Source: Octopus bimaculoides
Lineage: Eukaryota
Direction: 5' to 3'
Length of the DNA: 64,000 nt
Assembly (NCBI RefSeq): GCF_001194135.2
Contig: NC_068988.1
Location: 83,335,939-83,399,938, forward strand
Within the stretch, counting starts at the first letter, position 1; each line of letters opens with the position of its first letter. Shown here piece by piece: positions 1,068 through 47,917 of this stretch. The notes beneath the pieces are model-generated. The model was not told the DNA's origin and searched no databases. It saw only the letters and a list, made by a program, of their open reading frames with translations. Position numbers and translations under genes: made by a program.

Positions 1068-1151
1068 GCATAACTACCTCAGCTTCAATATGATGCCAGT
1101 AATATCTCCGGGAGAAGGCTATTCAAAATCTCAAGTTTCTGTGAAAACTCG
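1068..1151 (+). CDS. Tudor gene exon A (84 nt, phase 2-2; HNYLSFNMMPVISPGEGYSKSQVSVKTR)
   Basis: ttttacttatatttcag acceptor and cg|gtaact donor, open frame. The trailing cg plus the first base a of the next exon gives Arg in frame. The internal ATG ATG could alternatively be the start. Confidence 0.7.
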
Positions 1152-46100: not shown

Positions 46101-47917
46101 ATGAAATTAATATTAAGAACAATTATGGTGAGAGGCAGATCTACCAAGCTGTTCTGAGCTCAATGTCTCAGATCATTTGTGCTTTTCCTTTTTTCTGTGT
46201 GAACAGTTCAGCCCTATAGCAAGTTCTTGACTTATCATGGCCAAGCTATACTGTGAATGAATTAGTTCATCTCCATATACAGCATTCATCAGTGATTTAT
46301 TGGTTTGCTGTTGAATTATTCCTTGAGGCNNNNNNNNNNNNNNNNNNNNNNNNNNNNNNCTTGATTAAATCATTTCAGCAGGATTTCATTGATTGCACTC
46401 TTTAAAACAGCAGAATGTACTCTACCACTATCTGTGGGTGAATATGACTTTGTGTAGTATGTACCATGCTTTCACTAAACTGTTTTAGGTGCTTCTATAA
46501 CCACAAGCAGATATCTTCTCAGCGCCTTCTCCCATGACTCTGTGACACATTCAAGATGTGACAAATGGAGAGAGAGAGAGAGAGAGCAGGCTGCACCAGC
46601 ATCCTAGCTAGTTACTCATTTACTGTTGAGTAGACTAAAAGTGACATGTAATGAAGTGTCTTGCTCAAGGAGACAATAGGCTGCTTAGTCCAGAAATCAA
46701 ACTTATTACCTCAAGATAAAGTGAACATCCTAATGACTAGGCCACACATATTCATGAAAATAGCATAAACATTATACAATCTTATTATATTATACTCCTC
46801 TACATCTGGGACTTGCTCCTGTTTTAAGACAGAAAAATATTTAGATATATAAGTTATGGTTTCAAACACATTTTTCTATGTTAACACACATTATTAATCA
46901 TGCTAACATTTGGGTATATATATATATACAAATCTACCAGTTTATTTAACTATTTTGATACAGTCATTTTTCATTGTTACTGTAGATTCTGATGACAACC
47001 CTCAAGAACATATCTCCATTTCTCCTTGCAATCATTCAATTAAAGGTGAGTTATGTTCTCAATGTGTTTATTTTACCTCTTTGTATACCTCTGAAGTTAA
47101 GTTTTATTATGGCATTATTATGGTTTTGGCCATACAGGATCACTGCCTTAAACTTTTAGTTTCAACCTGATACTTTAGTGCCATATCTTCATTTTTTATT
47201 AAGACATTATTTCTCAGCAATTAGTCAACTCTTACCACACAATCTATAAAGAAGTACTTATAGTTACTGATGTACACCTTGCCCCAGTGAGTTGGAAGTT
47301 ATTAATGTTTGTTCATATTTTGATAATCAGAAACAAGTATGTATTGGTGCATGTGGAGGTGGGGATACAGATAGCTACTGTGTTTTTGCTGTTGGTGGTA
47401 TGTTCAGCCTTTGTTTCAAATAATCTAGTTCATGTAGTTAAAATTTTTAAATTTCAGTTTACTATTTACAGTCACATGACTGGAGATTAGAAGTAGTTGG
47501 TGACAGCTGACATTGCTGACCAACAAACTAGTGGCAATATATCAAAGAAATGTTATTGTTACTTTAAAGTTGTAAATATGTGTTGTCTCCACAAAACAAG
47601 GTTTTGCATAAGAAAGATAGTTCATTTTGAAAGTTGTTTCTATACTTTGTTTTAAGAGTAAATGTTATGGTTTATCACCATTAACATTATTTTCATCCAT
47701 GTTGTAATTTTTGCATGGGTTTCACTGGACTAAATGAAATAATTTCCTGTGAATATGTTTTATTTCTTTTTCAGATTGCATCACTAGGGACACTGTAGGG
47801 TTTTCTGACTTGAGTGAAATAGATGAGAATCAAACATCAAATGAAAACATTGAGGAACAGTTTGATGAGGAAAAATCAGAACATAAGGATAGCAGAGAGT
47901 CAAGTGATGAACTGTAG
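1068..47917 (+). CDS. Multi-Tudor-domain protein gene (Tudor/TDRD6/TDRD15-like germline piRNA-pathway scaffold), 10 exons in window, ~2,900 aa, N-terminus possibly upstream
   Basis: Ten exons join with canonical AG/GT sites and matching phases. The translation contains 10 repeats of the extended-Tudor pattern (V.V..V.SP..F(W/Y).Q ... C.A.(F/Y)...WYRA ... F.D(Y/F)GN ... P.QA..C.L). Orthology among TDRD paralogs cannot be fixed without a search. Confidence 0.9.
2747..3015 (+). CDS. Tudor gene exon B: N-terminal half of Tudor domain 1
   Basis: tattttcag acceptor and aac c|gtaagt donor; encodes LNVMITHVTSPQYFHCQ...PGQPCIAQYSMDKSWYRAKVN. Confidence 0.93.
3572..3908 (+). mobile_element. tRNA-derived SINE with conserved central domain (gtgttcttgagcaagacact)
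   Basis: A-box (tgactcagtgg) and B-box (gttcgaatcc), followed by a non-tRNA body; the head is shared with 33200-33527. Confidence 0.75.
4046..4146. repeat. (TA)n followed by (GA)n microsatellite
   Basis: Direct reading. Confidence 0.95.
5097..5452. mobile_element. Two oppositely oriented piggyBac-like (TTAA-CCCTTT...AAAGGG-TTAA) MITE copies
   Basis: A forward truncated copy at 5097-5256 abuts a reverse copy at 5257-5452, which is bounded by ttaaccctttagcattc and gaaagggttaa. Further copies lie at 12848-13056 and 29457-29662. Confidence 0.7.
5564..9217 (+). CDS. Tudor gene giant exon C (3,654 nt): end of Tudor 1 plus Tudor 2-6
   Basis: ttttttcttttgttttatttcag acceptor; begins R-ELTNNIIEVFFIDYGN, completing Tudor 1; continuous with the 1208-aa ORF; donor aaa c|gtaagt at 9217. 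Confidence 0.96.
9864..10935 (+). CDS. Tudor gene exon D: Tudor 7 and degenerate Tudor 8
   Basis: ttttttcttttacag acceptor in phase 1; encodes LGVYVTHLVTPENFWCQ...DGKFYRGKV...LVDFGN; donor tta tg|gtaagt. Confidence 0.93.
11993..12127. repeat. (CT)n microsatellite
   Basis: Direct reading; about 65 units with a few interruptions. Confidence 0.95.
12473..12591. repeat. Compound (TATG)n/(TA)n/(GA)n microsatellite
   Basis: Direct reading. Confidence 0.9.
12848..13056 (-). mobile_element. piggyBac-like MITE, family 1
   Basis: Same internal sequence as 5257-5452; ends gaatgttaaaggg. Confidence 0.6.
13868..13957 (+). CDS. Tudor gene exon E (90 nt, phase 2-2; W-IGQMKVKECKADNLYVVSLIPAELSSSHHR)
   Basis: ttaatttctctttttag acceptor and cacag|gtgagt donor, open frame, phase fits both neighbours. 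Not in the ORF track. Confidence 0.85.
16085..16285 (-). mobile_element. tRNA-derived SINE family B (gagcactggggtcgat core)
   Basis: Reverse complement reads gcagcgaactggcagaatcatta...tttcatcctttcagggt...gagcactggggtcgatgtaatcgac; same family as 16768-16975. Confidence 0.7.
16318..16477 (+). mobile_element. RTE-LINE 3'-tail element ending in (GAT)n
   Basis: ggttggcgttaggaagggcatccagc...aacccatgctagcatggaaagcggacgttaaacgatgatgat. Many copies, e.g. 1625-1790(-), 12243-12460(-), 25400-25600, 37870-38066, 44690-44960, 51235-51430(-). The same tail ends the RTE fragments. Confidence 0.75.
16768..16975 (+). mobile_element. tRNA-derived SINE family B
   Basis: ggcaagctggtagaattgttagca...tttcatccttcagggttgataaaataaataccagttaagcactggg. 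Confidence 0.7.
17419..20412 (+). CDS. Tudor gene exon F: Tudor 9, coding minisatellite, acidic low-complexity linker, N-half of Tudor 10
   Basis: gttttactttgtag acceptor; GLPCLAKYSEDGALYRAEV...FCDYGN; donor aat|gtgagt at 20412. The exon crosses N gap 18297-19076, and the frame is restored if the gap is 784 nt. Confidence 0.88.
18134..19455 (+). repeat. Coding 30-bp minisatellite (10-aa unit PETEAVT[TV/SM]S) interrupted by an assembly gap
   Basis: Unit ccagaaactgaagcagttacaactgtgtcc occurs ~5.5x left of the gap. The variant ...acatc(t/c)atgtcc occurs ~12x right of the gap and decays toward 3'. Confidence 0.95.
18297..19076. other. Assembly gap (780 N) inside a coding exon; other gaps at 22394-22823, 29973-29982, 46330-46359, 61048-61677, 62896-63125
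   Basis: N runs. Confidence 1.
21908..22095. mobile_element. hAT-like MITE
   Basis: TIRs caaggatgggcaac / gttgcccatgcatg; perfect 8-bp TSD ttataaac at 21900-21907 and 22096-22103. Confidence 0.8.
23691..23856 (+). CDS. Tudor gene exon G: C-half of Tudor 10
   Basis: tgtgtttcag acceptor in phase 0; VFFVDIGKE...PPAMSIHCFLVDV...WSTTAFEIFK; donor aaa g|gtagct. Confidence 0.9.
25837..25985 (+). mobile_element. tRNA-derived SINE head (tRNA-Arg-like)
   Basis: ggaggcgcaatggcccagtggttagggcagcggactcgcg...gtttcgattccc carries A and B boxes and continues into non-tRNA sequence. Confidence 0.6.
26690..27890 (+). mobile_element. Decayed RTE-clade LINE, 3' part
   Basis: Remnant motifs ELLYADDLVL, GLRVNLAKTKVL, CSICRKGV and ARIRIGWAKLRELLPLL; 3' region with duplicated subrepeats and a (gat)n tail. 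Confidence 0.85.
29457..29662 (+). mobile_element. piggyBac-like MITE, family 1 (3'-truncated by an RTE-tail element)
   Basis: Starts ttaaccctttaacattcagattac, colinear with the 5097 copy. Confidence 0.6.
29664..30330 (-). mobile_element. RTE-tail element with internal ~57-60 bp tandem subrepeats
   Basis: (atc)n head on the + strand; repeated units tcacc(c/a)gcacaagagccagtccaggggcac...gatctcgctcgaaa. Segment 29800-29972 is repeated verbatim after a 10-N gap. Confidence 0.7.
30380..31372 (-). mobile_element. Decayed RTE-clade LINE, 3' part, minus strand
   Basis: ORF-track peptides SITARIRIGWAKFREYLPL, YDACVRTVMLHCNETWAM...ERNEASMLRWMC and LCWYGHVMHMDEDSCVKRC; (atc)n tail at 30383. Confidence 0.85.
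31502..31711 (+). CDS. Tudor gene exon H: end of the last extended-Tudor fold
   Basis: Long pyrimidine tract plus aag acceptor in phase 1; EFTDSEQLEMRIDV...YGVYLY...NLNDRLIDLGHA matches the fold end seen in the other repeats; donor atg g|gttagt. Confidence 0.85.
32665..33900 (+). mobile_element. Heavily decayed RTE-clade LINE (RT N-terminal half), split by a SINE
   Basis: VKDMKAGKAAEVSQIVAEMLKIS, then ..SNYRSMKL.. and NLKNAFEQVP remnants, colinear with 54840-55330. Confidence 0.65.
33200..33527 (+). mobile_element. tRNA-derived SINE inserted into an RTE LINE remnant
   Basis: A-box tggcttagtgg, B-box gttcaattcc; 11-bp TSD atactttgtag at 33189-33199 and 33528-33538. Confidence 0.85.
33904..34258. 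mobile_element. hAT (Charlie-like) MITE
   Basis: TIRs cagcatttctcaac / gttgagaaatactg (13/14); perfect 8-bp TSD ctctacat at 33896-33903 and 34259-34266. Confidence 0.85.
37286..37500. mobile_element. piggyBac-like MITE, family 2
   Basis: ttaacccttttataacc ... ggtatgaaatgggttaa. Related copies at ~38368-38555, ~42285-42481, ~28340-28515 and ~59330-59452. Confidence 0.6.
39253..39481. mobile_element. hAT-like MITE
   Basis: Termini cagtggttttca / gggaaacactg; TSD ccatagtc / ccataatc (7/8). Confidence 0.65.
43589..43649. other. 28-bp-stem hairpin in the long intron
   Basis: acctaccaaccaaacaacatttatattg-gccta-caatataaatgttgtttggttggtgggt. Confidence 0.9.
46986..47045 (+). CDS. Probable Tudor gene exon I (60 nt, phase 1-1; DSDDNPQEHISISPCNHSIK)
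   Basis: ttttcattgttactgtag acceptor and aaa g|gtgagt donor, phase compatible. No domain support. Confidence 0.65.
47775..47917 (+). CDS. Probable terminal coding exon J (acidic tail DCITRDTVGFSDLSEIDENQ...SSDEL*)
   Basis: ttttatttctttttcag acceptor in phase 1; 46-codon D/E-rich open frame ending in TAG at 47915-47917; AATAAA signals follow. Confidence 0.7.

What the first reader, a model, noticed from the sequence alone, without database searches (positions are those of the whole stretch)
1068..47917. A ~2,900-aa, 10-Tudor germline scaffold gene that the ORF track shows only in pieces
Seen: ten exons join with canonical sites and consistent phases (2-2, 2-1, 1-1, 1-2, 2-2, 2-0, 0-1, 1-1, 1-1, 1-stop). 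Exons A, E and J are absent from the ORF track, and Tudor 1 and Tudor 10 are each split across an intron. Known: proteins with 8-11 tandem extended Tudor domains (Drosophila Tudor, vertebrate TDRD6/TDRD15) bind symmetrically dimethylated arginines of Piwi proteins and organise germ granules. TDRD6 is also largely encoded by one giant exon, as here (3.65 kb). Inference: this is the cephalopod Tudor/TDRD6-type scaffold. Gene predictors probably split or truncate it at the in-exon gap.
Basis: partly seen in the sequence, partly recalled or inferred. Interest (0 to 1): 0.7.

Follow-up and report, generated by a model that had tools for sequence, protein, structure and literature searches.

The report
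Octopus ten-Tudor TDRD6-type gene
The scattered reading frames are the exons of one Octopus bimaculoides gene for a ten-Tudor-domain protein of the Tudor/TDRD6 type; public annotation already predicts it, but cuts it in two at an assembly gap.

Summary
They join into one open frame of 2,645 codons plus whatever the gap hides. All ten Tudor segments pass Pfam's TUDOR threshold. Tudor 1 and Tudor 10 become full-length only after splicing.

The gap at 18297-19076 lies inside a 30-nt tandem repeat (PETEAVT[TS][VM]S). Both flanks are in the same repeat register if the gap is 30n+4 nt. As written (780 N) it is out of frame.

The gene is already in public databases, and the window is O. bimaculoides:
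- XP_014774883.2 "tudor domain-containing 6, partial" (2,008 aa) is identical to exons A to the left half of F and stops at the gap.
- XP_052826183.1 (LOC128246987) is identical to the right half of F through exon J.
- O. vulgaris CAI9726720.1 (2,617 aa, 95% identical) has the same ten junctions in one protein.

So the predicted mis-annotation is real.

Corrections: the length is probably about 2,650 aa, not 2,900, and one 51-nt cassette exon (40598-40648) was missed.

Germ-granule function is inferred from architecture only. Five of ten domains keep a complete methyl-arginine cage. The finding is correct but ordinary.

The parts
1068..1151 (+). Exon A. Acceptor at 1067|1068, start codon ATG at 1090 (MMPVISPGEG...), phase 2 at the donor.
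   Evidence: Sequence read. The ATGATG context is conserved, 59% aa identity in orthologous locus L001. RefSeq and O. vulgaris proteins start MMPVIS.
2747..3015 (+). Exon B. N-terminal part of Tudor 1.
   Evidence: Pfam TUDOR profile positions 2-75 alone and 2-121 once joined to exon C. 74% aa identity in L001.
5564..9217 (+). Exon C, the giant exon of 3,654 nt. Rest of Tudor 1, and Tudor 2 to 6.
   Evidence: Orthologous ORFs P0001/P0002 are 48% identical.
9864..10935 (+). Exon D. Tudor 7 and most of Tudor 8. An in-frame alternative acceptor at 9806|9807 is not used in any annotated model.
   Evidence: Orthologs L003/L004/L005 start their similarity at the 9864 acceptor and keep the TG|GT phase-2 donor. 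RefSeq and O. vulgaris read ...TDKH|ILQPLD.
13868..13957 (+). Exon E, 90 nt. C-terminal strands of the Tudor 8 module (WIGQMKVKECKADNLYVVSLIPAELSSSHH).
   Evidence: Ortholog in L003 at 16268-16357 has the same length and phase. Present in RefSeq and O. vulgaris proteins.
17419..20412 (+). Exon F. Tudor 9, an acidic disordered linker with the decapeptide repeat array, and the N-half of Tudor 10. Contains the assembly gap.
   Evidence: A single 509-aa ORF (P0251) in a distant relative covers both halves.
18135..18296 (+). Left part of the 30-nt tandem repeat (PETEAVTTVS), 5.4 copies at 98% matches.
18297..19076 (.). Assembly gap (780 N) inside the repeat array and inside exon F. The true length must be 30n+4 nt for register and frame.
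19077..19461 (+). Right part of the tandem repeat (PETEAVTSMS variants), 12.8 copies at 87% matches.
23691..23856 (+). Exon G. Second half of the Tudor 10 core.
31502..31711 (+). Exon H. SN-like C-terminal part of the Tudor 10 module. Read-through of its donor meets TAG at once.
40598..40648 (+). Cassette exon of 51 nt, phase 1-1 (ELSFHDISCCRDSCLSD). Present in RefSeq isoform X1 of LOC128246987 and the older full-length isoforms, absent from X2 and from the O. vulgaris and O. sinensis models.
46986..47045 (+). Exon I, 60 nt (DSDDNPQEHISISPCNHSIK).
   Evidence: Best ab initio candidate with a perfect donor. Present in all annotated models.
47775..47917 (+). Exon J. Acidic C-terminal tail and TAG stop. 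AATAAA at 48038.
2787..5703 (+). Tudor 1, Pfam stretch, spans intron B/C. Complete aromatic cage (Y,Y,F,Y,N).
6163..6513 (+). Tudor 2. Cage complete (F,Y,Y,Y,N).
6718..7059 (+). Tudor 3. Cage complete (F,Y,F,F,N).
7336..7692 (+). Tudor 4. Three of four aromatics plus Asn (K,Y,F,Y,N).
7960..8325 (+). Tudor 5. Cage complete (Y,Y,F,Y,N).
8656..9018 (+). Tudor 6. Degenerate cage (N,C,C,T,E). Weakest Pfam score, 34 bits.
9908..10246 (+). Tudor 7. Two of four aromatics plus Asn (S,Y,L,F,N).
10544..10897 (+). Tudor 8 core. Degenerate cage (V,Y,D,C,L). The module is completed by exon E.
17450..17794 (+). Tudor 9. Cage complete (Y,Y,F,Y,N).
20179..23798 (+). Tudor 10, Pfam stretch, spans intron F/G. 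Degenerate cage (I,Q,F,I,K). The module continues into exon H.

Best explanation
This is the single Octopus bimaculoides gene for a multi-Tudor scaffold protein of the Drosophila Tudor / vertebrate TDRD6-TDRD15 type.

Shown here:
- Ten constitutive coding exons plus one 51-nt cassette exon, spread over 47 kb, encode about 2,650 aa.
- The protein is ten extended Tudor modules (Tudor barrel plus SN-like fold) with no other domain.
- A roughly 450-aa acidic, S/T/E/D-rich disordered linker sits between Tudor 9 and Tudor 10. It carries an array of PETEAVTxxS decapeptides.
- The assembly gap lies inside that array. This is why the ORF list, and the later RefSeq annotation, show the gene in pieces.

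Inferred mechanism:
- The five modules with a complete four-aromatic-plus-Asn cage (Tudor 1, 2, 3, 5 and 9, and perhaps 4) would bind symmetrically dimethylated arginines in the N-terminal RG/RA repeats of PIWI proteins.
- Multivalency would then crosslink PIWI-piRNA particles and partner proteins into germ granules (nuage or germ plasm).
- The cage-less modules (6, 8, 10, and partly 7) would serve as structural spacers or bind unmethylated partners.
- The acidic repeat linker would act as a flexible spacer.
For: Gene structure:
- Independent reconstruction gives one open frame with canonical splice sites.
- The translation of exons A to the left half of F is 100% identical to XP_014774883.2. 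XP_052826183.1 is an exact suffix of the translation of the right half of F to J.
- O. vulgaris CAI9726720.1 (2,617 aa) is 95% identical over the whole length, with the same junctions.
- Older O. bimaculoides RefSeq isoforms of 2,574-2,634 aa span the gap.
- Splice positions of A, B, D and E are conserved in loci that are 45-48% identical.
- A locus only 30% identical has the same order of pieces.

Domains:
- Ten Pfam TUDOR matches.
- Tudor 2 aligns over 166 residues to the human TDRD1 extended Tudor domain 5m9n.
- Spliced Tudor 10 aligns to 5m9n without a break across both junctions.
- It folds with pLDDT 87 and pTM 0.81. It superposes on 5m9n at TM 0.86/0.88 and 1.9 A.

Cage residues were read from an alignment with 5m9n.

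Family:
- The named best hits are maternal protein tudor, TDRD6 and TDRD15.
- PMC12147562 (Table 1) lists TDRD6/Tudor as having multiple extended Tudor domains, no other domain, and Aub/Ago3/Piwi binding in the piRNA pathway.
Against: - There is no expression, localisation or binding data for this protein in any cephalopod. No paper in the library cites the locus names.
- PIWI genes and piRNAs are expressed in somatic tissues of molluscs too (PMC6128900), so 'germline' may be too narrow.
- Half of the modules lack a complete cage.
- Orthology to TDRD6 as opposed to TDRD15 or Tud is unresolved. Scores are 357, 330 and 330 bits for TDRD15, Tud and TDRD6.
- The number of repeat units hidden in the gap is unknown.
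Confidence: 0.85

Rival explanations
1. There are two separate genes, as in the later RefSeq annotation: a 5' 'tudor domain-containing 6, partial' gene with Tudor 1-9, and a 3' gene LOC128246987 with Tudor 10.
For: RefSeq models XP_014774883.2 (2,008 aa) and XP_052826182.1/183.1 are separate loci. O. sinensis is also annotated as two loci, LOC115215146 and LOC115215147.
Against: - The 5' model is flagged partial and ends at the last codon before the N run.
- The 3' model starts at an ATG inside a repeat unit, 8 nt after the gap.
- Both flanks are the same repeat in the same register and coding frame.
- The gap-free O. vulgaris model is one protein.
- A distant relative has Tudor 9 and the N-half of Tudor 10 in one uninterrupted ORF.
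- The O. sinensis 5' model ends by reading the repeat in a wrong frame (HLCPQKLKQL...), which is an artefact.
Confidence: 0.03
2. It belongs to another multi-Tudor family (TDRD1, RNF17/TDRD4 or TDRD7) rather than to the Tudor/TDRD6/TDRD15 type.
For: Some hits named TDRD1 in insects and spiders score nearly as well, at 285-291 bits. All extended-Tudor proteins cluster in one noisy orthogroup (PMC12147562).
Against: - No MYND, RING, LOTUS, KH or helicase domain was found in any piece.
- Ten modules is far above the four I recall for TDRD1.
- RNF17 scores only 131 bits.
Confidence: 0.05
3. The protein is a multi-Tudor scaffold but is not germline-restricted. It would serve the somatic PIWI/piRNA pathway of molluscs, or other methyl-arginine clients, as much as germ granules.
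For: [quoted passage not shown] Nothing in the sequence speaks to tissue.
Against: Every characterised member of this type (Drosophila Tudor, mouse TDRD6, zebrafish Tdrd6a/b/c) acts in germ cells or germ plasm (PMC12147562, PMC13495786).
Confidence: 0.2
4. It is a decaying or non-functional copy.
For: Half of the cages are degenerate, and the repeat array is variable.
Against: - The open frame is intact over 2,645 codons and ten junctions.
- Identity to O. vulgaris is 95% along the full length.
- Exons are conserved and introns are not in loci that are 45-48% identical.
Confidence: 0.01

Closest known systems
Octopus bimaculoides RefSeq XP_014774883.2 'tudor domain-containing 6, partial' plus XP_052826182.1/XP_052826183.1 (LOC128246987). 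Older isoforms XP_014774882.1 to 886.1 (LOC106872402).
   Same: These are the same locus. They are 100% identical to the translated exons, with identical junctions.
   Different: The later models cut the gene in two at the gap. The older full-length isoforms bridge the gap by dropping different numbers of repeat units.
Octopus vulgaris CAI9726720.1 / UniProt A0AA36B2F5, 'Tudor domain-containing protein', 2,617 aa
   Same: Ortholog, 95% identical end to end. It has the same start, the same ten junctions and ten Tudor modules.
   Different: No gap, about 15 repeat units, and no cassette exon in the model.
Drosophila maternal protein Tudor (11 extended Tudor domains)
   Same: Only tandem extended Tudor modules and no other domain. 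The fold of single modules matches 3nth/3ntk/4q5y. A subset of modules carries a complete sDMA cage.
   Different: - 22-29% identity, with one-to-one domain correspondence not established.
- Ten modules rather than eleven.
- A long acidic repeat linker lies before the last module.
Vertebrate TDRD6 and TDRD15
   Same: Multi-Tudor-only architecture, and mostly encoded by one or two very large exons (from memory for TDRD6). Similar scores of 250-357 bits. RefSeq uses the TDRD6 name for the Octopus genes.
   Different: My own eTudor profile finds 6 to 8 modules in the vertebrate proteins, against ten here. Which vertebrate paralogue is the ortholog cannot be resolved.
Human/mouse TDRD1 extended Tudor domains (PDB 5m9n, 4b9w)
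   Same: Best structural and sequence match for single modules.
   Different: From memory, TDRD1 has an N-terminal MYND finger and four modules. No MYND finger is present here.

Membership tests
Tudor/TDRD6/TDRD15-type multi-Tudor scaffold | Many (at least 7) tandem Tudor domains | tested here: met
   Ten segments each pass Pfam PF00567, at 34-100 bits against a 23-bit cut-off, over nearly the whole profile.
Tudor/TDRD6/TDRD15-type multi-Tudor scaffold | The domains are of the extended type (Tudor barrel plus SN-like fold, about 180 aa) | tested here: met
   Tudor 2 aligns over 166 residues to 5m9n. Spliced Tudor 10 gives an AF2 model with pLDDT 87 and a Foldseek TM of 0.86/0.88 to 5m9n. All ten align over the full module.
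Tudor/TDRD6/TDRD15-type multi-Tudor scaffold | No accessory domain (MYND, RING, LOTUS, KH, helicase, SN repeats) | tested here: met
   Only Tudor-related Pfam families appear in every exon translation. Annotated proteins start at the same Met.
Tudor/TDRD6/TDRD15-type multi-Tudor scaffold | Aromatic cage plus Asn for symmetric dimethyl-arginine in at least some modules | tested here: met
   Complete in Tudor 1, 2, 3, 5 and 9. Three of four in Tudor 4. Degenerate in 6, 7, 8 and 10.
Tudor/TDRD6/TDRD15-type multi-Tudor scaffold | Phylogenetic orthology to Tud/TDRD6 rather than other extended-Tudor families | tested here: inconclusive
   Scores to TDRD15, Tud, TDRD6 and proteins named 'TDRD1' are all 250-357 bits. 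No tree was built. PMC12147562 reports one noisy orthogroup for these proteins.
Tudor/TDRD6/TDRD15-type multi-Tudor scaffold | Binds sDMA-PIWI and localises to germ granules; germline expression | not testable with these tools
   No expression or binding data are held. No paper cites the locus.
TDRD1 | N-terminal MYND zinc finger followed by four extended Tudor domains | tested here: not met
   No PF01753 match in any exon translation, and ten modules.
Cephalopod (Octopus) origin of the window | Identity to annotated proteins of the taxon | tested here: met
   2,008 of 2,008 and 635 of 635 residues are identical to O. bimaculoides RefSeq proteins.

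The most novel reading that the evidence does not exclude
The decapeptide array PETEAVT[TS][VM]S in the Tudor 9-Tudor 10 linker may be an Octopus-lineage insertion whose copy number varies between species and perhaps between individuals. It is absent from the exon-F ortholog of a more distant relative. O. vulgaris has about 15 units, and O. bimaculoides has at least 17 plus the gap. 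Such an array could tune spacing or condensate behaviour of the scaffold. It is also a recurrent trap for assembly and annotation, since two of the three Octopus annotations break there.
Probability: 0.2. Interest if true: 0.3.

Novelty: already known. Interest (0 to 1): 0.15.

Why it matters
The practical value is for annotation. The later O. bimaculoides RefSeq models and the O. sinensis models cut this gene in two at the repeat array. Anyone counting Tudor-family genes or domains in cephalopods from those sets would get a nine-Tudor 'partial TDRD6' plus an unnamed one-Tudor protein. The correct unit is a ten-Tudor protein, as in O. vulgaris. Biologically it is the expected cephalopod member of a metazoan-wide family. 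It opens no new question by itself, though it gives a defined target for studying germ granules in cephalopods.

Tried and rejected
- I first took the acceptor at 9806|9807 for exon D. It is in frame and has a good polypyrimidine tract. I rejected it because three orthologous loci and all annotated proteins use 9863|9864.
- A profile built from the window's own Tudor modules did not find exon E at a significant E-value. Exon E came from a weak hit plus splice sites and phase, and orthologs and annotation then confirmed it.
- My ab initio exon scoring between H and J ranked exon I first. It did not put the 51-nt cassette exon at 40598-40648 in its top 25.
- Three word-indexed protein searches never listed the Octopus proteins. 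The second was swamped by long multi-Tudor proteins. Only the exhaustive representative search found them.
- Cluster look-ups of the 45-48% relatives gave no names. Their sample accessions are in no paper. Those species stay unidentified.
- Rfam found nothing in the window.
- Pfam on ORFs downstream of the gene and in introns found only faint reverse-transcriptase and PHD-like traces. No second gene was seen in 48-64 kb.
- I did not attempt a domain-level phylogeny. Whole-protein scores do not discriminate, and the literature reports the same difficulty.

Full report
**What is in the sequence**

The window is AT-rich (36% G+C, CpG observed/expected 0.31) and holds six N runs. On the + strand, a series of long stop-free stretches carries obvious Tudor motifs such as WYRA...VDYGN. 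Pfam TUDOR (PF00567) is the only kind of family found in them.

**Gene model**

The exons are:
- A 1068-1151, ATG at 1090
- B 2747-3015
- C 5564-9217 (3,654 nt)
- D 9864-10935
- E 13868-13957
- F 17419-20412
- G 23691-23856
- H 31502-31711
- I 46986-47045
- J 47775-47917 (TAG)

Every intron is GT-AG with a polypyrimidine tract. At a 60-aa ORF threshold, A, E and J fall below the list and I does not.

**Ten Tudor modules**

- Ten segments of the spliced protein were cut out. Each matches Pfam TUDOR over nearly the whole profile at 34-100 bits, against a 23-bit cut-off.
- Exon B alone covers profile positions 2-75. After joining to exon C the match is 2-121. The F and G pieces cover 4-84 and 81-119 and join to 4-119. 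The junctions therefore restore whole domains.
- Tudor 2 aligns over 166 residues to the human TDRD1 extended Tudor domain 5m9n.
- Spliced Tudor 10 aligns to 5m9n residues 44-217 without interruption across the F/G and G/H junctions.
- Its AlphaFold model has pLDDT 87.1 and pTM 0.81. It superposes on 5m9n at TM 0.86/0.88 and 1.9 A.
- Exon E supplies the last strands of the Tudor 8 module.

**The gaps**

*Gap 18297-19076.* It sits in a 30-nt tandem repeat encoding PETEAVT[TS][VM]S, with 5.4 copies before it and 12.8 after. The left flank stops at unit position 13 and the right flank resumes at position 18. The two sides are therefore one array, in one coding frame, if the real gap is 30n+4 nt. 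With the 780 N as written the halves are in frames 1 and 0. This is why the ORF list shows a false 702-aa frame running on as HLCPEKLKQL....

Two independent sequences show that both sides belong to one exon. The gap-free O. vulgaris protein crosses the array. A 509-aa ORF of a more distant relative (P0251) holds Tudor 9 (53% identical) and the N-half of Tudor 10 (29%) with no interruption and no decapeptide array.

*Other gaps.* All are intronic.
- 22394-22823 lies in intron F-G, beside (TA)n/(CA)n.
- 29973-29982 lies in intron G-H. Its two flanks are the same 173 nt at 100% identity, which indicates an unmerged overlap.
- 46330-46359 lies upstream of exon I.

**Related loci**

An ENA contig (L001, L003) and two Logan contigs (L004, L005) carry orthologs at 45-48% identity.
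- Exon A is 59% identical, with the same ATGATG and the same acceptor and donor.
- Exon B is 74% identical and exon C 48%.
- Similarity in exon D starts exactly at the 9864 acceptor. The TG|GT donor is kept in all three loci.
- A 90-nt exon with the same phase and W..G..KV....Y.VSL lies between D and the end of L003.
- A locus only 30% identical (L002) has B-, C-, D-, F-, G- and H-like pieces in the same order.

**Identity of the gene**

The word-indexed searches returned no close named protein. The exhaustive search with the 3' part of exon F found P0250 at 95% identity. Its cluster contains:
- CAI9726720.1 / A0AA36B2F5, 'Tudor domain-containing protein', Octopus vulgaris, 2,617 aa
- XP_014774883.2, 'tudor domain-containing 6, partial', O. 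bimaculoides, 2,008 aa
- XP_052826182.1 and XP_052826183.1, 'uncharacterized LOC128246987', 652 and 635 aa
- older O. bimaculoides isoforms of LOC106872402, 2,574-2,634 aa
- O. sinensis 'tudor domain-containing 6-like' (LOC115215146, about 2,100 aa) and LOC115215147 (502 aa)

My translation of exon A through the left half of exon F equals XP_014774883.2 residue for residue. XP_052826183.1 is an exact suffix of my translation of the right half of F through J, starting at the ATG at 19084. So the window is O. bimaculoides.

The O. sinensis 5' model ends by translating the repeat in a wrong frame. The O. vulgaris protein has the same start, the same ten junctions, the 9864 acceptor and exon I. 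Isoform X1 of LOC128246987 and the older isoforms add a 17-aa cassette exon. I located it at 40598-40648 (cag|AA...G|gtaatt, phase 1-1).

**Length**

The spliced frame is 2,008 + 637 = 2,645 codons, plus whatever the gap hides. O. vulgaris has about 15 repeat units, and the window already shows 17. The 780 N probably overstate the missing sequence. The protein is likely about 2,650 aa, or 2,665 with the cassette exon, rather than 2,900.

**How it probably works (inferred)**

I aligned all modules with TDRD1 5m9n and read the four aromatic cage positions and the Asn.
- The cage is complete in Tudor 1, 2, 3, 5 and 9.
- Three of four aromatics are kept in Tudor 4.
- Two of four are kept in Tudor 7.
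- The cage is lost in Tudor 6, 8 and 10.

By analogy with Drosophila Tudor and TDRD6 (PMC12147562 Table 1; PMC13495786 for zebrafish Tdrd6), the intact cages would bind symmetrically dimethylated arginines of PIWI N-termini. Multivalency would assemble germ granules. The cage-less modules could be spacers or bind unmethylated partners. Krimper eTud1, which binds Ago3, appears among the fold matches (7cfc).

The linker between Tudor 9 and 10 is acidic (net charge -69 over 387 residues) and rich in T, S and E. None of this was tested. No paper in the library names the locus. PIWI/piRNA expression in molluscs is not confined to the germline (PMC6128900).

**Family placement**

The architecture (only extended Tudor modules, ten of them, no MYND, RING, LOTUS or KH domain) fits the Tudor/TDRD6/TDRD15 type and excludes TDRD1, RNF17 and TDRD7. 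Whole-protein scores do not separate TDRD15 (357 bits), Tud (330) and TDRD6 (330). A published survey also found these proteins in one unresolved orthogroup (PMC12147562).

**Verdict**

The observation and the interpretation are right, including the forecast of a split annotation. The gene is already predicted in public databases, and full-length in O. vulgaris. It is an expected member of a well-known family. Interest is low, apart from the annotation fix and the lineage-specific repeat array.

Noticed in passing
window 29800-30155: The 173 nt before the 10-N gap (29800-29972) are 100% identical to the 173 nt after it (29983-30155). This looks like two contig ends that overlap but were joined with N instead of merged, giving a false tandem duplication inside intron G-H.
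   Followed up: partly
window 40598-40648: A 51-nt cassette exon (ELSFHDISCCRDSCLSD, phase 1-1) is used in RefSeq isoform X1 of LOC128246987 and in the older full-length isoforms. It is absent from isoform X2 and from the O. vulgaris and O. sinensis models.
   Followed up: yes
window 9807-9863: An in-frame alternative acceptor lies 57 nt upstream of exon D (tatttcag|AT). It would add 19 residues (SELPFASSLIANQIFSFTD). It is not conserved in orthologs and not used in annotated models.
   Followed up: yes
window 17339-19447 (+), and minus-strand ORFs at 18046-19452: The decapeptide repeat has no stop codon in any of the three + frames, nor on the opposite strand. Together with the N run it produces several long false ORFs. 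The O. sinensis protein XP_029640178.1 ends in exactly this wrong frame (HLCPQKLKQL...).
   Followed up: yes
P0251 (Logan contig, exon F ortholog) against window 18135-19461: The exon-F ortholog of a more distant relative (53% identical in Tudor 9) has no PETEAVT array in its linker. The array therefore seems to be an Octopus-lineage insertion. Copy number differs between O. vulgaris (about 15) and O. bimaculoides (at least 17).
   Followed up: partly
window 16323-16477 and 29669-29823: A 155-nt element is present in two different introns in opposite orientation at 99.4% identity. Older copies at 82% lie at 30383-30528. It is probably a young short interspersed element.
   Followed up: no
window 26703-27890, 30379-31443, 55648-56184: These are fragments of a retroelement, with a faint RVT_1 match at 26703-26855. 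Copies at 74-80% identity appear in inverted orientation in intron G-H and again downstream of the gene.
   Followed up: partly
window 31712-31716: If the donor of exon H is not used, the frame meets TAG at once (...SHMG*). An intron-retaining or early-polyadenylated transcript would give a protein lacking only the 67-aa acidic tail.
   Followed up: no
window 48000-64000: No second gene was recognised downstream of the stop codon. The region holds microsatellites, repeat fragments and two more N runs (61048-61677, 62896-63125). The stretch at 63634-63999 (LDVTLDIKNDTYRPYHKPS...) looks like a piece of a retroelement polymerase but has no Pfam match.
   Followed up: partly
L001 versus L003 (ENA ERZ21867824 ctg115818l): In the 48%-identical relative, the intron between the giant exon and exon D is about 15 kb, against 646 nt in the window. 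Intron sizes in this gene are very labile.
   Followed up: no
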